The notes under the pieces were generated by a model. It saw only the letters and a program-made list of their open reading frames with translations, made no database searches and had not been told where the DNA came from. A program made the translations under genes and the position numbers. From IMG/VR virus record IMGVR_UViG_3300044213_000107, positions 186,001 to 250,000 of that record: a stretch of 64,000 bases of DNA. One strand, 5' to 3'. Shown one piece after another: positions 3-19,432 of this stretch; the stretch's first letter is position 1, and each line of letters opens with the position of its first letter.

Positions 3-167
3 GCATACGATGCCATTAACATAGATTATCTTGTGCGTAGACTACAAAGTTTTTTACCACGCATAAACATTAGGATCAGCAAACCATTAAAATGGTCGTT
101 TGCCCAGGATCTTCTTACACATTATTATGTGCTTAAAAAACAAGACTACCAGGAGATCATGGCATGA
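3..167 (+). CDS. transketolase N-terminal (TPP-binding) subunit, 3' part only (truncated by window edge)
   Basis: Open frame AYDAINIDYLVRRLQSFLP...LLTHYYVL...EIMA* whose stop overlaps (ATGA) the start of the transketolase C-terminal subunit. Confidence 0.55.
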   Translation, partial: AYDAINIDYLVRRLQSFLPRINIRISKPLKWSFAQDLLTHYYVLKKQDYQEIMA

Positions 168-646
168 GAAAAGAATGTGCTCAACTGTTGTTAGAAGAAA
201 TGTCAGTAAATGATAAAATTCGTGTGATCACTGCTGATCTCGGGTTTGGCATTCTAGACCACATACGAAATGCTTACCCAGATCGTTTTTATAATGTGGG
301 TGCTGCAGAACAACTAATGATTGGTGTTGGCATAGGAATGGCCGAAGAAGGTCTTGTACCTGTTTGCTATTCAATGAGTAGTTTTTTATTGTATAGGCCT
401 TTTGAGTTTTTGCGTAACTATGTCAACTACGAGCACATACCAGTTAAGTTATTAGGGTCTGGTCGCGATCAAGATTATAGTCACGATGGTGTTAGTCACT
501 GGGCACACGACGACGAGCTAGTATTAAACGCATTACCAAATATTAAAATGTATAAGCCTAATAATTTAGATGAGTTAAACATTAATTTTAATGAATACAT
601 TAATAGTTCCAATCCTGCTTATTTAAATCTAAGGAGAGCAATTTGA
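164..646 (+). CDS. transketolase C-terminal (pyrimidine-binding) subunit
   Basis: TADLGFG, NVGAAEQLMIGVGIGMA and SHW motifs of split transketolases. Confidence 0.85.
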   Translation: MRKECAQLLLEEMSVNDKIRVITADLGFGILDHIRNAYPDRFYNVGAAEQLMIGVGIGMAEEGLVPVCYSMSSFLLYRPFEFLRNYVNYEHIPVKLLGSGRDQDYSHDGVSHWAHDDELVLNALPNIKMYKPNNLDELNINFNEYINSSNPAYLNLRRAI

Positions 647-10971: not shown

Positions 10972-11409
10972 TTATAGTATAGCCGATAACCAATCAGTAT
11001 ACAATAAATTTTTATGTATTTTTATTTTCATTATCCCAGGAAAACTCATAAAGGAATGAGTCTTCCATACCTTGTTGCTTGTATCTTTGTACACAGATAT
11101 TTTAGATATGCTATTGATAAAATCTATAGTATCCACTGTTAACCTTTCCAACACAATATATAAATCTTCAGTTATATCATTGTTGGAATCAATTTTTGTG
11201 TCTGTTAGTTCCTTATTAACAAATTCTATTGAAACACTGGTTAAATCAGAATTAACAGGAATATTATAATGATGTATTTCTTCTATATCATTTTTATGTT
11301 CAATCGCATATTCGTACACACATAATTTATTGTTTATAAAAATGTTATATACAGGTTTTTTAGTAGACGTTGAATGGAGTAGCAACGATAGGGATAACTT
11401 TTTTGTCAT
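10972..11409 (-). CDS. hypothetical protein in the tRNA-inserted cassette
   Basis: 145-aa ORF overlapping the radical SAM C-terminus. Confidence 0.65.
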   Translation of the reverse strand: MTKKLSLSLLLHSTSTKKPVYNIFINNKLCVYEYAIEHKNDIEEIHHYNIPVNSDLTSVSIEFVNKELTDTKIDSNNDITEDLYIVLERLTVDTIDFINSISKISVYKDTSNKVWKTHSFMSFPGIMKIKIHKNLLYTDWLSAIL

Positions 11410-12892
11410 TTTGCTTGTGCTCTAAATATTTTTGCTCTAATCCTTCGATCTCTAATAATTTTTCATTTTGTCGGTTGATTTCAGAATAATACCCATATTC
11501 CTGCATTACTTCAACAAATCTTTTCCATCTGTTTACTCTAACATCAAATGTATTGTTTACAAATTGTGTGCTAGTCCAGAAAAAATCGCCCCACTGGTCA
11601 TGCCTATTATGTTCAAGACCGTATTCATCTGCATATCGTTGCATGAACCCGCTTCCATTTGTTAGCACCATTGGCAAAGATAAAAATACTTTTATCATAT
11701 TGTTAGTTGTTAAGTGGGCATGAGTTTTAAGTAAATCGATACTTTGTTGGAAATCATCTTCCGTTTCGGTGGGATATCCTACAAACATTAACCATACTTG
11801 TTTTATACCTTTATCAAAACAATTTTCAGCAAACCAAGTTATATCTTCATTACTGAATTTCTTCTTCATATCGTTACGAACTTTTTCACTACCCGACTCT
11901 ATGCCTACTTTAAACAATTTCGCTCCGGCAGTTGATGCTAGTTTAAAATCTGATTCAGGCATGGATATTTTAGATCGACAAATGGCATAGCCAGAATATT
12001 CTATTCTATTGGGAATTTCTTCAGTTAATACCGTATTCATTAAACGATAATTTGTGATACTCCCATTCACAAGATTGTCAGTAAACTCAAACTTATTAAT
12101 ACCATATTTAGAATGTGTTTCGATAATTTCACGTGCTATATCATTACCTTTTCTGTAGACGAATTTTGGCCAAGACGACTGCACATCGCAAAATGTACAC
12201 TCTCTGACACATCCTTTACTGCCAGTAACCGGTATAGTTAAATTTTTATTTTTGTAACTTGGATACAATGAAAAATTATATCCTTCCCATGAAGGTGCAG
12301 GTGTGTTACTAAGTGCCTCTGCAGATACAGGAGGTGCAGTGTGTATTCCTTTTTTCTTATTTTGGATGACAGAAATCAAATCATTTTCCGCATCCCCACG
12401 ATACACAGAATCTATCGGAAGATAATCCATGAAATAATTAGCATAATTAATTCCACTGATTCGTTCGTTGTTATCTAGACCTCTGCCACCTATCATTATG
12501 TAACTGTTAGGCGATATCTCTCGAACTATAGTGGATAAAGGTACAACAAAATCTAAACTTTGGCTAGAAAATACAGACAATAAAATTGTATCCGGATTAA
12601 AATTTTTTATTTGTTGTTTAACAGCTTTTCTAAGCCATTTTAAAATTTTTAAAATATTAATGCTATTTGCCGGTCTGTACCCTCTTATGGCAAACATATC
12701 TACTATTATATTCCATTGATCTGCAAATTCGCTAAACAAATCAATATTTAGGTCCCAAACTTTACTATTGTATCCATTATGTTTTAAAATGCCGTTTATA
12801 ACTGCAGGGCCGTATGGAACATCTCCGAAACTTTCTATTCCTGTATTAACAACTCTTACTGGAACTACTATTGTAAGGACATTTTTATTCAT
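11360..12892 (-). CDS. cobalamin-binding (class B-like) radical SAM protein
   Basis: N-terminal B12-binding-like domain (PYGPAVI...GG...GDAE), KGCVRECTFC, GIESGS, FVGYPTET. Confidence 0.85.
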   Translation of the reverse strand: MNKNVLTIVVPVRVVNTGIESFGDVPYGPAVINGILKHNGYNSKVWDLNIDLFSEFADQWNIIVDMFAIRGYRPANSINILKILKWLRKAVKQQIKNFNPDTILLSVFSSQSLDFVVPLSTIVREISPNSYIMIGGRGLDNNERISGINYANYFMDYLPIDSVYRGDAENDLISVIQNKKKGIHTAPPVSAEALSNTPAPSWEGYNFSLYPSYKNKNLTIPVTGSKGCVRECTFCDVQSSWPKFVYRKGNDIAREIIETHSKYGINKFEFTDNLVNGSITNYRLMNTVLTEEIPNRIEYSGYAICRSKISMPESDFKLASTAGAKLFKVGIESGSEKVRNDMKKKFSNEDITWFAENCFDKGIKQVWLMFVGYPTETEDDFQQSIDLLKTHAHLTTNNMIKVFLSLPMVLTNGSGFMQRYADEYGLEHNRHDQWGDFFWTSTQFVNNTFDVRVNRWKRFVEVMQEYGYYSEINRQNEKLLEIEGLEQKYLEHKQNDKKVIPIVATPFNVY

Positions 12893-13311: not shown

Positions 13312-13387
13312 TGGTGGTCAGAAGAGCACTCGAAGCTCCACATTCATCCTTATGAGGGATGCTCTCTTCCTCTTAAGATATCTGACC
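13312..13387 (-). tRNA. tRNA-CAT (probably elongator Met), atypical D arm
   Basis: CATCC-CTCATAA-GGATG, T arm GGAGC-TTCGAGT-GCTCT, CCA. Confidence 0.85.
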
Positions 13388-13476
13388 ATATAAAAACACA
13401 CTCTTATCAATATCCCAGCGGTCGACTCGGTTTAACAGGGCCCAACGTAGAGGGTCGGGCGAATGTGTTTTTATAT
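13388..13476 (-). ncRNA. candidate structured RNA of about 89 nt filling a tRNA spacer
   Basis: 16-bp closing stem ATATAAAAACACATTC/GAGTGTGTTTTTATAT abutting tRNA ends on both sides; inner CCCGAC/GTTGGG hairpin. Confidence 0.6.
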
Positions 13477-13513
13477 GGTAGGAGCACGGGGATTTGAACC
13501 CTGAACCTATCAA
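13476..13513 (-). pseudogene. tRNA 3'-half remnant fused to the HNH stop codon
   Basis: TTGAT-AGGTT-CAGGG-TTCAAAT-CCCCG-TGCTCCT-A-CCA, with no matching 5' half found. Confidence 0.7.
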
Positions 13514-14085
13514 TGACTGAGTAGTCGTTTTGCCCTGGCGTGGCTAGCACCCTTGTCAGGCAACCCAACACTTCTCAATGCTTCTGAAATAGTATTATGT
13601 TTCTTAACAGCCTCTAATAATACTTCATCCGGAACAATTCTTTTTTTGTTATTTCTTCCTCGCCAAGTCTTAGTTTTTGAATGACAATTAGGACAAATAC
13701 ATTCTAAATTAGATCGGTCATTATTTTTTGTATCACCGTCTTTATGCTCTAATTCTAAAACAATAGGATCACCCATCCATTCTGAAATTCCACAATGGTT
13801 ACACTTATGACCTTGCTCTTCTAATACCCGTCGCTTTCTATTCTCGCTACCTAATTTTTCAAAAGGTGTGGATTGGTATTTCTCTAATGCCCAAGCTGTT
13901 GTCTTGGCACTTCGTAATCTTATTTCCTCGGTTGTAATTGGAGTTTTTCTAGTCCAACGACCGGCATTAGCAATACTTTTCTTCTTTTTGCTTTCTTCAG
14001 TAAACACTCTACTATTTGAACATTTTCTAGAACAGAATGTTCCAGGCTTAGTATGTGCTGTATTACATTTAGGACAATTTTTCAT
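13510..14085 (-). CDS. HNH homing endonuclease
   Basis: CPKC...FCSRKC zinc finger; CNHC...LELEHKDGDTKNNDRSNLECICPNCH. Confidence 0.92.
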   Translation of the reverse strand: MKNCPKCNTAHTKPGTFCSRKCSNSRVFTEESKKKKSIANAGRWTRKTPITTEEIRLRSAKTTAWALEKYQSTPFEKLGSENRKRRVLEEQGHKCNHCGISEWMGDPIVLELEHKDGDTKNNDRSNLECICPNCHSKTKTWRGRNNKKRIVPDEVLLEAVKKHNTISEALRSVGLPDKGASHARAKRLLSH

Positions 14086-14149
14086 AATATTGAACTCTTA
14101 CTTGTTATACTTTATTTATACTTAAAGTTCAATTTTATCAAAAATCAGT

Positions 14150-14223
14150 TGGTAGGCCCGGAGGGTACTGACCCCTCTTTTACGGATTAAAAGTCCGTTA
14201 CTTCACCTTAAAGTTTCAAGCCC
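14150..14223 (-). tRNA. tRNA-Lys(TTT) with non-canonical T-loop
   Basis: ACGGA-CTTTTAA-TCCGT; T arm GAGGG-GTCAGTA-CCCTC. Confidence 0.8.
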
Positions 14224-14228
14224 GTATG

Positions 14229-14304
14229 TGGTCCTTGCTCAGAGAATCGAACTCTGTTAGTCCGGGTAAGAGCCGGATACTTCGCCAGCAAAGTTTAGCA
14301 AGGA
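14229..14304 (-). tRNA. tRNA-Lys(CTT)
   Basis: TCCGG-CTCTTAC-CCGGA, CCA. Confidence 0.88.
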
Positions 14305-17212: not shown

Positions 17213-17247
17213 ATATATATTATTTCGTTTTGAACATAAATAATAAC

Positions 17248-18033
17248 ATGAACACCTGTCAACAATGTACTTCATTATTTGCTCAAACTCCTGGAACGTA
17301 CGGTAAATTTTGCTCTGTATCCTGTAGTAGTAAGTTTAATAATAAAATTAGACGCCAACAGACTACGGAAAACTATTTATTAAATCCAAAAGTTTGTAAA
17401 AATTGCAATTCAATCATAAATTATTCTCAAAGAAAAAGTAATATTTTTTGTAGCCGATCCTGCGCCGCTGTGTTTAATAATGCCAAAAAAGATTGGACTA
17501 ATATTAAAACTGGGCCGACACCTAAACAAAAGGCACCGAAATTAAAAAGAAAAGCGAGAACTAATACTATCCCAGATGCAGACGGACCATACACTATTAT
17601 ATACCTATGCACTTGCAAATTTACTGGAAAAAAATGGTACTCCCCAACAGTTAAGACCATACACCCATCAACAATATCAACTAAAAAATTGTATTCTTAT
17701 CAATGTAGATTTAACTTTGGTATTAAGTCGTACCCTGAATGGTTTGCTTATGCATCAAATTTAATAAACACTAACGGCTGGTACTCAGCCTCTAATAGAG
17801 GTAATAATTTATCTGGATGTTCTCGTGATCATTTGTATTCAGTATCGGATGGATACAAAAACAATATAGATCCTAAAATAATATCTCATCCTGCAAACTG
17901 TGAGATAATTCCGCACAGGAAAAATCAGAGTAAAAACAAGACTTCGTCGATTACATTAGAAGAACTAAAAGAAAGAATCAAAAAATTTAATCAAAAATAT
18001 TTGGAGATGCCAGATGGGGTCGAGCCATCCTAG
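17248..18033 (+). CDS. HNH-family endonuclease with two Cys-rich zinc-finger repeats
   Basis: CQQC...FCSVSC and CKNC...FCSRSC; SRDHLYSV...HPANCEIIPHRKNQSK; start taken at ATG 17248 (TAAATA-N5-ATG) rather than TTG 17230. Confidence 0.8.
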   Translation: MNTCQQCTSLFAQTPGTYGKFCSVSCSSKFNNKIRRQQTTENYLLNPKVCKNCNSIINYSQRKSNIFCSRSCAAVFNNAKKDWTNIKTGPTPKQKAPKLKRKARTNTIPDADGPYTIIYLCTCKFTGKKWYSPTVKTIHPSTISTKKLYSYQCRFNFGIKSYPEWFAYASNLINTNGWYSASNRGNNLSGCSRDHLYSVSDGYKNNIDPKIISHPANCEIIPHRKNQSKNKTSSITLEELKERIKKFNQKYLEMPDGVEPS

Positions 18034-18075
18034 AAAGTTTTGCAGGCTTCCACCTAACCGCTCGGACATGGCATC
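18002..18075 (-). tRNA. tRNA-Cys(GCA) with non-canonical T-loop
   Basis: GATGCCA/TGGCATC, U73, loop CTGCAAA, T arm GATGG-CTCGACC-CCATC; overlaps the HNH C-terminus antisense. Confidence 0.85.
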
Positions 18076-18220: not shown

Positions 18221-19402
18221 TTATACTGGGAATACTTCCCTAAAATTTGTTTTTCTTATACGATCTAACATACCAATATATTCGTTAAATGTATTGATTA
18301 AGTTAGGATTGTGCACAGCATTTTCCAATGAGTTTATTGTAAATTTAATCGCTGATATATAGTTATATCGCAGATAATGCGTTAAAGGAATCTGAGATTT
18401 TAGTTCTTGCAAATCGAGAATAAATTGATTTCTTTGTGCATCTGTTAACACTTCTATGTCTAAATATGGTTTAGACATTAATCTACCAACATTCACAGCA
18501 TATGAGTTATCAACACAATATTGAATTAATGGTATCAACGCCCAGAAACTTGTATACTGTAGTGTATGGCCAATGGTAATAGGATTATTAGGCCATGTAG
18601 GATTAGGACGTGTGGCTAATTTTTTAATATTAGCATCTACGGTTGCCCACTCACTACCATATCTAACATATTCTGTATGTTGCTCGGTACCTTCTAAACT
18701 TACAACTATTGCAACAGATTTAAATTTTGAAATACAATCGTATACTTCATCTGTTAATGTTGTACCGTTTGTGGTAACTGTTAAATTTAATTGCTCCGGA
18801 TGCGGAATGCTTTTTAACATTGCAATAGCATTAGGAGTTATAAGTGGCTCGCCACCTGTTAAAAAAATATGTTCAACATTTTCTAATAGTCGAGGCTCCA
18901 GCTCTTGATATTCATCTGTTTCAAACCAATTTCTTTTTTGTATAAATTGATCATCATGAGTTAAGTGAACAAAATTTTTATATTGTTCTCTATTCATTTT
19001 TACTTCAGTTTCTATACTAGAACTGCAATAAGGATTACACATTATACATTTTAAATTACAGTGATTGCCAAATTCAACATGTAAATGTTTTATGCCATAA
19101 GATTTATCTGGTGAAAAATCTTGTCTAATAAAATTTTCAAATGTGCGATTACCATTTATTCTGTACGACGATGATCCATTGTCTTCTTCGTCCCAACAAC
19201 GACTACAACCTTCATGTCTTTGGCCATTGTCTAGTTCTTGACTAATTTTAATAACTTTTGTTTGTCGCCAACGATCAAATTGATCATATTTATCAACCAA
19301 ATTACCATCTTTTATTTGATAATTACAACAAGGTGTAAGTGTGCCGTCTGTGCGAATATTAACACCAATATGCGAATGTATACAAAATGTTTCTTGATTC
19401 AT
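18221..19402 (-). CDS. radical SAM protein with SPASM/twitch-type cluster
   Basis: CNLKCIMC, TGGEP, LTPCC...CSRC; start likely ATG 19402 (TATAAATA-N5-ATG); track gives 19423. Confidence 0.9.
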   Translation of the reverse strand: MNQETFCIHSHIGVNIRTDGTLTPCCNYQIKDGNLVDKYDQFDRWRQTKVIKISQELDNGQRHEGCSRCWDEEDNGSSSYRINGNRTFENFIRQDFSPDKSYGIKHLHVEFGNHCNLKCIMCNPYCSSSIETEVKMNREQYKNFVHLTHDDQFIQKRNWFETDEYQELEPRLLENVEHIFLTGGEPLITPNAIAMLKSIPHPEQLNLTVTTNGTTLTDEVYDCISKFKSVAIVVSLEGTEQHTEYVRYGSEWATVDANIKKLATRPNPTWPNNPITIGHTLQYTSFWALIPLIQYCVDNSYAVNVGRLMSKPYLDIEVLTDAQRNQFILDLQELKSQIPLTHYLRYNYISAIKFTINSLENAVHNPNLINTFNEYIGMLDRIRKTNFREVFPV

Positions 19403-19432
19403 AGTGATATTTATATGCAACATATATTGTAA

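What the first reader, a model, noticed from the sequence alone, without database searches (positions are those of the whole stretch)
13476..14223. Second HNH cassette: tRNA 3' half fused to the nuclease stop codon, next to a tRNA-Lys with an aberrant T-loop
Seen: the HNH stop (UGA) lies within the anticodon-stem 3' strand of a tRNA remnant running to CCA. Upstream is tRNA-Lys(UUU) with T-loop GUCAGUA. Apart from the fMet variant, the only clearly abnormal T-loops in the array (this one and tRNA-Cys) are both beside HNH genes. The HNH late promoter TATAAATA sits inside an inverted repeat TTGAACT/AGTTCAA that covers its ribosome-binding region, as in T4 homing endonuclease control. Inferred: T-loop recoding gives immunity to the neighbouring nuclease.
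Basis: partly seen in the sequence, partly recalled or inferred. Interest (0 to 1): 0.6.

Follow-up and report, generated by a model that had tools for sequence, protein, structure and literature searches.

The report
Homing nuclease gene truncating a tRNA-Lys
A selfish HNH nuclease gene sits in the lysine-tRNA slot of a freshwater giant phage and has cut off the front of one tRNA-Lys gene. The odd T-loop of the neighbouring tRNA-Lys is a widespread family trait, not a shield against this nuclease.

Summary
The sequence features are real. A 191-aa HNH nuclease ORF (14085..13510, minus strand) follows a tRNA-Lys(UUU) with T-loop GUCAGUA. Its leader is a hairpin with TATAAATA in the loop and the ribosome-binding region in the 3' arm. 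Its stop codon abuts a tRNA 3' piece ending in CCA.

I identified that piece. It is the last 34 nt (position 43 to CCA) of a canonical tRNA-Lys(UUU). That tRNA is intact, with the same downstream flank, in 8 related viral contigs and in contigs from the same kind of lakes.

- In this clade the T-loop co-varies with the D-loop: 18:55 is G:U or A:G with no exceptions.
- 90 of 100 Lys(UUU) members have no HNH relative within 1.5 kb.
- GUCAGUA itself occurs without any HNH.
- Two HNH orthologues sit beside a tRNA-Lys(UUU) with a normal T-loop.

The nuclease belongs to the F-TflIV-like family that lives in tRNA arrays of T5-like, T4-like and giant phages. It is an ordinary kind of element with an informative scar. 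The swapped-elbow tRNAs are the more interesting by-product.

The parts
14229..14303 (-). tRNA-Lys(CUU), canonical T-loop TTCGATT, D-arm related to the odd tRNA-Lys
   Evidence: ARAGORN; sequence
14150..14223 (-). Intact tRNA-Lys(UUU) of the 'swapped-elbow' clade (A8/U14, T-loop GUCAGUA = G54/G58). It is the only tRNA-Lys(UUU) in the 260.7-kb record.
   Evidence: Rfam 44 bits; missed by ARAGORN; clade statistics
14086..14149 (-). Cassette leader: hairpin arms about 14137..14124 and 14099..14086, TATAAATA 14120..14113 in the loop, SD-like AAGAG 14099..14095 in the 3' arm
   Evidence: genome-wide positioning of TATAAATA
13510..14085 (-). HNH homing-endonuclease ORF, 191 aa: N-terminal CxxC..CxxxC zinc finger, zinc-HNH core (about residues 82-142), C-terminal three-helix domain; stop TGA 13512..13510
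   Evidence: PHROG 14736 E 1e-25; Pfam HNH_3 below cut-off; invariant C95 C98 H114 N126 C131 C134 H135; model pLDDT 81 with best fold hits all HNH nucleases
13476..13509 (-). 34-nt 3' stub (position 43/44 to CCA) of a canonical tRNA-Lys(UUU) ('type A'), with one change (U64 to C) that breaks T-stem pair 50-64
   Evidence: intact parent in L012-L019; alignment A2; metagenome contigs that continue into the anticodon arm; no 5' half in the window
13386..13478 (-). Conserved inter-tRNA hairpin. A perfect 15-nt inverted repeat CCATATAAAAACACA pairs the CCA of the stub with the first bases of the next tRNA.
   Evidence: z -4.9; the same element follows intact tRNA-Lys in relatives
13312..13387 (-). 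tRNA-Met(CAU), the next gene of the array

Best explanation
This is a free-standing F-TflIV-like HNH homing-endonuclease cassette lodged in the tRNA-Lys slot of the tRNA array of an uncultured freshwater jumbo phage.

The cassette starts a few bases after the CCA of an intact tRNA-Lys(UUU). It ends exactly where the last 34 nt of a second, canonical tRNA-Lys(UUU) gene begin. So the nuclease gene has replaced positions 1-42 of that gene (shown).

Inferred mechanism:
1. The enzyme is made late. Read-through transcripts from the array fold the leader hairpin and hide the ribosome-binding site. Transcripts started at the TATAAATA in the loop lack the 5' arm and are translated.
2. In mixed infections the nuclease cuts HNH-less relatives at or near their canonical tRNA-Lys(UUU) gene.
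3. Repair from the HNH-plus genome copies in the cassette and its flanks.

The loss of the canonical tRNA-Lys(UUU) is covered by the upstream copy. That copy belongs to a large clade of phage tRNA-Lys with a rebuilt elbow: A8-U14 and A54-U58, or here G54/G58. Its odd T-loop is a clade trait under RNA-structural constraint, not an adaptation to this nuclease.
For: Nuclease identity: PHROG HNH families, E down to 1e-25. Invariant zinc-HNH residues in 9 relatives. Best fold matches are all HNH domains.

Family habit:
- Close relatives L005, L006, L122, L109 and L117 all sit directly after a tRNA-Lys(UUU); L007 sits directly after a tRNA-Lys(CUU).
- Eneladusvirus orthologues sit after a tRNA-Lys-like gene.
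- Relatives lie in the tRNA array of a T5-like phage and at the edge of a T4-like array, annotated F-TflIV.

Stub identity: 8 contigs carry the intact tRNA plus the same flank. In the fetched loci an intact type A and a clade tRNA never occur together. Only HNH-plus loci pair a type A piece with a clade member.

Both alleles are present in nature. The HNH-plus sequence is identical in contigs from 3 other freshwater studies. Other contigs at 13503/13509 run on into an intact tRNA-Lys anticodon arm.

Sporadic presence: 76 of 80 clade Lys(UUU) genes with enough downstream sequence lack the HNH.

Control hairpin. TATAAATA is rare in the genome (19 copies), but 10 of the 19 lie within 45 nt upstream of an ORF start, against 7.4% for permuted 8-mers.

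Need for the tRNA: AAA makes up 78% of Lys codons, and no other tRNA-Lys(UUU) is in the record.

Published precedent: SegB in the T4 tRNA cluster cuts tRNA genes and shows the same hairpin logic (PMC2330249).
Against: - No cleavage data exist. The target site is inferred only from the insertion point.
- No HNH-less twin of this very genome was found, so the empty site is reconstructed from more distant, mosaic arrays.
- A T4 gp55-like late sigma factor was not found in the 74%-complete record. 'Late promoter' therefore rests on motif position alone.
- The window's own hairpin is weak (z -1.7).
- The stub is much better preserved than expected for an old fossil, given 26-48% divergence among the nucleases. 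That needs either recent or repeated homing, or selection on the stub.
Confidence: 0.75

Rival explanations
1. One reading: the GUCAGUA T-loop of the neighbouring tRNA-Lys was recoded so that this HNH cannot cut it.
For: The gene destroyed by the cassette had a canonical T-loop, and the survivor in the window does not. A tRNA-cluster homing nuclease, SegB, is known to read the T-loop motif GGTTCRANTCC (PMC2330249).
Against: GTCAGTA occurs in L026 without an HNH. 90 of 100 clade members have no HNH relative within 1.5 kb. In L005 and L006 the surviving tRNA-Lys(UUU) next to the HNH has a canonical T-loop. HNH-plus L109, L117 and L122 carry the same ATCGTTC loop as dozens of HNH-less loci.
Confidence: 0.06
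2. A general version of the same idea. The swapped T-loop (GGATCGTTCC in place of GGTTCGAATCC) spread in these phages because it removes the DNA motif read by T-loop-recognising homing nucleases of tRNA arrays in general. The D-loop changes followed as RNA-level compensation.
For: SegB's recognition core is the T-loop motif. These arrays are full of nuclease genes: HNH copies, a DUF559 nuclease in L010, and a group I intron in L008. The swapped loop occurs in many isoacceptors, 85 of 1408 unique tRNAs.
Against: There is no association with an adjacent nuclease. Most tRNAs in the same arrays keep the canonical loop. Nothing shows that the nucleases here read the T-loop.
Confidence: 0.12
3. The rebuilt elbow serves the RNA. 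It lets the phage tRNA escape a host tRNA-directed defence or modification enzyme, or changes its handling by the translation machinery. It has nothing to do with homing nucleases.
For: Strict tertiary co-variation: 18:55 G:U or A:G in 43 of 43 unique sequences; 8:14 A:U in 40 and U:A in 2; compensatory T-stem pairs. Phage tRNA-Lys variants that resist a host nuclease are known: T5 tRNA-Lys against PARIS AriB (PMC11464382).
Against: The known tRNA-Lys nucleases read the anticodon stem-loop, which is ordinary here. No host or defence system is known for this uncultured phage.
Confidence: 0.25
4. The 34-nt stub is kept because it works. Together with the hairpin it could act as a processing or stabilising 3' end for the nuclease mRNA, or as a signal for maturation of the downstream tRNA-Met.
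For: The stub differs by 1 nt from the living tRNA, while the nuclease proteins differ by 26-48%. Its CCA is part of the conserved hairpin. Related HNH genes end inside an intact downstream tRNA, so tRNA processing would cut their mRNA. The same was proposed for segB.
Against: The stub is shorter and degraded in L005, L122, L109 and L117, and absent in L006. The T-stem mismatch in the window argues against selection on the arm.
Confidence: 0.15
5. A split or intron-containing tRNA-Lys: the HNH lies in an intron and the tRNA is restored by splicing.
For: HNH genes often live in group I introns. One intron sits near a second HNH copy in L008.
Against: No 5' half of the parent tRNA exists anywhere in the window. 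No intron family is detected here. The sequence upstream of the cassette is a complete, different tRNA.
Confidence: 0.01

Closest known systems
Phage T5 HNH endonucleases of the tRNA gene region (F-TflI, F-TflII, F-TflIV; Akulenko et al. 2004, as cited in PMC2330249)
   Same: HNH nuclease ORFs placed between tRNA genes. The query is up to 46% identical over its C-terminal half to proteins annotated F-TflIV, and 40-42% identical to HNH genes inside T5-like tRNA arrays. In Salmonella phage S124 the ORF runs 6 nt into the next tRNA.
   Different: Here the downstream tRNA gene is truncated to a 34-nt stub. The leader carries a TATAAATA-in-hairpin module. The host is an uncultured freshwater jumbo phage. 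No biochemistry is available for this member.
Phage T4 SegB, a free-standing homing endonuclease in the tRNA cluster (PMC2330249)
   Same: A selfish nuclease inside a phage tRNA array whose targets are tRNA genes. Its RBS is hidden in a hairpin and its stop codon sits at the edge of the next tRNA. It drives preferential inheritance of the tRNA region.
   Different: SegB is GIY-YIG, not HNH. It has no promoter of its own. It leaves its neighbouring tRNA genes intact.
T4 I-TevI/II/III and Aeh1 MobE expression control (as summarised in PMC2330249)
   Same: A late or middle promoter lies within or next to a hairpin that sequesters the RBS on longer early transcripts. The same layout is conserved in 10 members of this HNH family.
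   Different: Timing and transcript starts are untested here. No gp55 homologue was found in the incomplete record.
Phage T5 tRNA-Lys that neutralises PARIS (PMC11464382)
   Same: A phage-encoded tRNA-Lys(UUU) that departs from the canonical sequence and whose departure has a function.
   Different: The T5 changes are in the anticodon stem. Here the anticodon arm is ordinary and the elbow (positions 8, 14, 18, 54, 55, 58) is rebuilt. No link to any defence system is shown.

Membership tests
HNH (His-Me finger) endonucleases | Catalytic His...Asn...His/Asn motif on a beta-beta-alpha metal finger | tested here: met
   Invariant H114, N121/N122/N126 and H135 in 9 relatives. PHROG HNH families, E 1e-25 to 1e-15. 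All best fold matches are HNH domains of Cap5, Cas9 and McrA, at E 6e-3 or weaker. Pfam HNH_3 scores only 18.7 bits, below its 24.8 cut-off.
HNH (His-Me finger) endonucleases | Two CxxC pairs that bind structural zinc (zinc-HNH subclass) | tested here: met
   C95, C98, C131 and C134 are invariant.
Free-standing homing endonuclease genes | Present or absent at one locus among otherwise related genomes | tested here: met
   The same tRNA-Lys plus hairpin slot occurs with the HNH in 4 and without it in 76 of 80 clade Lys(UUU) loci. Both alleles are present in lake metagenome contigs.
Free-standing homing endonuclease genes | The enzyme cleaves the nuclease-less allele near the insertion point, and the gene is copied in with its flanks | not testable with these tools
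   Needs purified protein and substrates, or mixed infections.
F-TflIV-like nucleases of phage tRNA arrays | Sequence relationship plus residence between tRNA genes | tested here: met
   tblastn hits to T5-like and T4-like phages; their contexts.
T4-type late promoter with RBS-sequestering hairpin | TATAAATA placed so that the late transcript lacks the 5' arm, and the RBS lies in the 3' arm | tested here: met
   Geometry in the window. Conserved in 10 relatives, with 3 compensatory pairs. The motif is positioned before ORFs genome-wide.
T4-type late promoter with RBS-sequestering hairpin | A gp55-type late sigma factor in the genome | tested here: inconclusive
   T4 gp55 finds nothing in the record, which is 74% complete, and the query is a single distant sequence.
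Functional elongator tRNA (the upstream tRNA-Lys(UUU)) | Cloverleaf with co-varying stems, Lys identity elements (UUU anticodon, A73), encoded CCA | tested here: met
   Rfam 44 bits. All T-stem pairs are Watson-Crick with several pair types; A73 in 42 of 43; CCA in 43 of 43.
Functional elongator tRNA (the upstream tRNA-Lys(UUU)) | Canonical T-loop T54-Psi55-C56-R57-A58 and U8-A14 | tested here: not met
   G54, U55, C56, A57, G58 and A8/U14 in the window. The clade consensus is A54/U58 and A8/U14.
Intron-split tRNA gene | Both tRNA halves flank the insert | tested here: not met
   No 5' half within 3 mismatches anywhere in the window. No intron family hit.

The most novel reading that the evidence does not exclude
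The nuclease and a divergent tRNA-Lys(UUU) travel together. Homing destroys the recipient's canonical tRNA-Lys(UUU) gene and installs a replacement isoacceptor that the enzyme cannot cut, so the phage becomes dependent on the incoming module.

More broadly, the swapped-elbow tRNAs of freshwater phages (A54-U58, often also A8-U14) may be an undescribed tRNA architecture, selected because it is invisible to nucleases that read the universal T-loop, either on DNA or on RNA.
Probability: 0.2. Interest if true: 0.75.

Novelty: new member of a known kind. Interest (0 to 1): 0.4.

Why it matters
The locus shows at base resolution how a selfish nuclease gene remodels a phage tRNA array. One tRNA-Lys(UUU) gene is cut off at position 43 and a second, structurally unusual copy carries the load. 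This adds an environmental jumbo-phage case to the T5 (F-Tfl) and T4 (SegB) examples, and it names a concrete candidate target for a cleavage test.

The by-product may matter more. Many tRNAs in these phages have the T54-A58 pair swapped, and in the tRNA-Lys clade the U8-A14 pair is swapped as well, with clean co-variation. That is a natural experiment on the tRNA elbow and a possible route of escape from T-loop-reading enzymes.

Tried and rejected
- Megablast of the region against deposited phages gave only short tRNA-Met matches.
- The neighbouring radical-SAM protein found no relatives in viral contigs, so it could not be used to fetch close relatives.
- A marker search with the unusual tRNA-Met next door found 6 contigs, but their arrays are mosaic. 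None is an empty-site twin of this locus.
- T4 gp55 found nothing in the record.
- A sequence search of solved structures gave no meaningful hit.
- Foldseek gave only weak HNH hits, E 6e-3 at best.
- A paper search for A54/U58 T-loops found nothing in the held library, which does not show novelty.
- The sigma-70 promoter and terminator scan found nothing on the coding strand of the cassette.
- The intron or split-tRNA reading was rejected.
- The apparent match of the codons for the C-terminal K-K-L-L-G motif in L122 and L109 to the tRNA-Lys anticodon loop in alignment A2 was judged coincidental. The motif is a conserved protein feature across contexts.
- The large protein searches, the metagenome and genome contig scans and the complex predictor were not used. 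The questions were settled without them.
- Read laying was given 3,001 bases.

Full report
**Where the window lies.** The window is bases 186001-250000 of a 260.7-kb IMG/VR virus record estimated 74% complete. GC is 38.5%. Near-identical sequence is found only in freshwater metagenomes. All 25 ARAGORN tRNAs of the record lie in the window, on the minus strand. Rfam adds two more, at 14223..14153 and 18075..18005.

**The observation.** Read on the minus strand, the order is:
- tRNA-Lys(CUU), 14303..14229
- tRNA-Lys(UUU), 14223..14150
- a 64-nt leader
- a 191-aa ORF, 14085..13510
- a tRNA 3' piece ending in CCA, 13509..13476
- a long hairpin
- tRNA-Met, 13387..13312

The tRNA-Lys(UUU) has T-arm GAGGG-GTCAGTA-CCCTC. 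It is missed by ARAGORN but scores 44 bits with the Rfam tRNA model. In the leader, TATAAATA lies between TTGAACT and AGTTCAA, and the second arm ends 4 nt before the ATG. Two points need qualifying: what the remnant is, and whether the ORF beside tRNA-Cys is an HNH (see 'The second odd T-loop').

**The nuclease.**
- PHROGs place the ORF in HNH endonuclease families, with E values down to 1e-25. Pfam HNH_3 is below its cut-off.
- An alignment of nine relatives shows three invariant features: an N-terminal CxxC..CxxxC finger, two CxxC pairs, and the H..N..H residues.
- An AlphaFold model (pLDDT 81) finds only HNH domains among its best, weak fold matches.
- By tblastn, the nearest deposited relatives are in Eneladusvirus jumbo phages (37-39% identity, full length), in T5-like phages and in T4-like phages, where the protein is annotated F-TflIV.
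- In Salmonella phage S124 the gene lies between tRNA-Ala and tRNA-Leu and runs 6 nt into the latter. In Escherichia phage BP32 it ends 6 nt before the tRNA array.
- In both Eneladusvirus genomes it follows a tRNA-Lys(UUU)-like gene and has the same hairpin leader.

**What the remnant is.** A pattern taken from the remnant found eight viral contigs (L012-L019). In each it is the 3' end of an intact, fully canonical tRNA-Lys(UUU), Rfam 67-74 bits. That tRNA is followed by the same flank that follows the remnant in the window, TATAAAAACACA.

In alignment A2 the window matches the L017 form from position 43/44 to the CCA and on into the flank. The only change within the tRNA part is U64 to C, which explains the mismatch in the remnant's T-stem. 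Upstream of that point there is no similarity. The TGA stop sits immediately 5' of the junction. No 5' half of this tRNA exists in the window, and no intron is detected. So the nuclease gene occupies the place of positions 1-42 of a canonical tRNA-Lys(UUU) gene.

Relatives show the same scar in different states of decay:
- L005 (74% identical nuclease) keeps a stub with indels.
- L122 and L109 (53-54%) keep 18 nt.
- L117 keeps traces.
- L006 keeps none.

A more distant branch (L008, L127, L035) lies before an intact tRNA-Asn, preceded by a tRNA-Thr in L008 and L127, with its stop codon inside the D-arm of the tRNA-Asn.

**Both alleles exist in nature.** Contigs from three other freshwater studies carry the HNH-plus sequence without a single difference. 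Other contigs that match the stub run on, at 13503 or 13509, into an intact tRNA-Lys anticodon arm. These contigs are short, so they show presence, not linkage.

**The odd T-loop.** With loci already fetched, this gives 121 complete instances and 43 unique sequences. Eight unique sequences have a CUU anticodon and 35 have UUU.

- The T-loops are ATCGTTC, ATCGTTA, AGCATTA, AGCGTTA, ATCATTA, GTCAGTA and GGCAGTA.
- Positions outside the search pattern co-vary cleanly. 18:55 is G:U in 31 and A:G in 12 unique sequences, with no exception. 54:58 is A:U in 37 and G:G in 4. 8:14 is A:U in 40 and U:A in 2, and the last D-loop base changes with it.
- T-stem and acceptor pairs show several Watson-Crick types. 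A73 is present in 42 of 43 and the encoded CCA in all.

These are real tRNAs with a rebuilt elbow. The window's GUCAGUA is the minor G54/G58 state of that clade.

The A54/U58 loop is not even confined to tRNA-Lys. It occurs in 85 of 1408 unique tRNAs of the fetched arrays, including Ile, Asp, His, Glu, Phe and Met.

**Test of the immunity idea.**
- Of 80 clade tRNA-Lys(UUU) genes with at least 700 nt of downstream sequence, 76 have no orthologue of the nuclease after them.
- Of 100 instances, 90 have no relative of it within 1.5 kb. 53 are flanked by other tRNAs within 300 nt on both sides, which leaves no room for any nuclease gene.
- The exact GTCAGTA loop is in L026, whose downstream genes are a small membrane-like ORF and a pyrimidine-dimer glycosylase.
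- The nuclease orthologues in L005 and L006 sit after a tRNA-Lys(UUU) with the canonical TTCGAAT loop.
- Those in L109, L117 and L122 sit after clade members with the commonest loop, ATCGTTC.

One weaker statement remains compatible with the data. In every locus that keeps a stub, the destroyed gene had a canonical T-loop, and an intact tRNA-Lys of different sequence stands just upstream. In the fetched loci an intact type A and a clade tRNA never occur together; only HNH-plus loci pair a clade member with a type A piece. That fits a nuclease aimed at the canonical gene. Because L005 and L006 keep a canonical T-loop upstream, the T-loop cannot be the discriminating feature there.

**The control hairpin.**
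- The window's hairpin is modest: -8.7 kcal/mol, z -1.7.
- The same layout recurs in ten family members, including the Eneladusvirus genes. The stem is TTGAAC/GTTCAA or a variant of it. ATAAATA is nearly invariant in the loop. The SD (AAGAG or GGAGG) lies in the 3' arm. Three of eight consensus pairs change on both sides.
- Across the genome TATAAATA is rare: 19 copies, against a median of 43 for permuted 8-mers. Ten of the 19 lie within 45 nt upstream of the ATG of an ORF of at least 80 aa, against 7.4% for the controls.
- A gp55 homologue was not found, which is inconclusive in an incomplete record.
- The logic matches what is described for I-TevI-III, Aeh1 MobE and, in part, segB (PMC2330249).

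**How it most likely works.**
- Shown: an HNH gene with a conserved regulated leader, sporadically present in the tRNA-Lys slot, that has replaced the 5' two-thirds of a canonical tRNA-Lys(UUU) gene.
- Inferred: late expression; cleavage of HNH-less genomes at or near the canonical tRNA-Lys(UUU) gene, probably close to position 43/44; and repair that copies in the cassette and flanks.
- The near-perfect stub in the window stands against 26-48% divergence of the proteins. Recent or repeated homing into canonical-allele genomes, with the right-hand exchange inside the tRNA 3' part, would explain this. Selection on the stub is the alternative.
- The upstream tRNA-Lys(UUU) is the only one in the record, and AAA is 78% of Lys codons. 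It is therefore probably needed.

**The second odd T-loop.** The tRNA-Cys at 18075..18002 has loop CTCGACC. A 267-aa ORF on the opposite strand (17230..18033) runs 32 nt into its 3' end. That ORF matches PHROG 23051 (unknown function), and only its N-terminal zinc-finger region resembles HNH nucleases. The claimed pairing of 'two odd T-loops, two HNH genes' is therefore not established.

[quoted passage not shown] SegB has recently been tied to amplification of tRNA genes under defence pressure (PMC13096335). This locus is a new member of that kind, with an unusually legible insertion scar. The swapped-elbow tRNAs are not something I could find described (a limited search), and they deserve their own study.

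**Limits.** There is no biochemistry, no transcript data and no empty-site twin of this genome. Viral contigs are fragments. The clade statistics come from one capped pattern scan whose pattern fixes positions 24-47 of the tRNA.

Noticed in passing
window 14150-14223 (-); L005-L136: A large clade of phage tRNA-Lys has both reverse-Hoogsteen tertiary pairs swapped (A8-U14, A54-U58) and strict 18:55 co-variation (G:U or A:G). The swapped T-arm GGATCGTTMCC also occurs in tRNA-Ile, Asp, His, Glu, Phe, Met and others: 85 of 1408 unique tRNAs in the fetched freshwater phage arrays.
   Followed up: partly
window 13386-13478; L016 about 30-560 (-); L139, L142 upstream of tRNA-Met: A conserved inter-tRNA hairpin runs CCATAT..N40-70..ATATGG. 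Its base pairs the CCA of one tRNA with the first bases or leader of the next. There are three tandem copies in L016, and the arm sequences co-vary between contigs (AAAAACACA/TGTGTTTyT versus TGAAGTACA/TGTACTTCA). It may be a processing signal or a recombination module.
   Followed up: partly
L018:4861-5326: A GOLLD RNA (Rfam 216 bits) lies just downstream of the intact canonical tRNA-Lys(UUU) and its hairpin in a related contig. None is found in the window.
   Followed up: no
window 17230-18033 (+) and 18002-18075 (-): A 267-aa ORF with N-terminal zinc fingers (PHROG 23051, unknown function) converges on tRNA-Cys (T-loop CTCGACC) and overlaps its 3' 32 nt on the opposite strand. Its HNH identity is not confirmed by Pfam.
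   Followed up: partly
L008:3001-3689, L127:2477-2980 (-), L035:64-570 (-); L144 (Salmonella phage S124) 1378-1907: In distant members of the HNH family the stop codon lies inside an intact downstream tRNA: TAG in the D-arm of tRNA-Asn, or a 6-nt overlap with tRNA-Leu. tRNA processing would therefore cut the nuclease mRNA at its stop, as proposed for segB.
   Followed up: partly
L010:3585-4322 (-): A different nuclease (DUF559 plus a C-terminal helix-turn-helix, 245 aa) occupies the same slot directly after a clade tRNA-Lys(UUU). A TATAAATA lies in its upstream leader. The slot seems to be a hot spot for several nuclease families.
   Followed up: partly
L004:3819-3940, L003:3815-3935 (Eneladusvirus): Genes of 121-122 nt are annotated tRNA-Lys(ttt) or undetermined. 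They have normal acceptor, D and T arms but about 46 extra nt between the D arm and the anticodon arm. They lie directly upstream of the HNH orthologue. Several such long 'pseudo-tRNAs' are nearby.
   Followed up: no
L008:5212-5397: A group I intron (Rfam 64 bits) lies just after a second copy of the HNH family in the same contig.
   Followed up: no
window 11360-12892 (-) and 18221-19423 (-): Two large radical-SAM-like ORFs bracket the tRNA array. The first (510 aa) has a Radical_SAM domain and a weak B12-binding match, and it found no relatives in viral contigs by the pattern method.
   Followed up: no
whole record G000: TATAAATA is depleted genome-wide (19 copies), but half of the copies sit just upstream of ORF starts. 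No T4 gp55 homologue was found in the 74%-complete record.
   Followed up: partly
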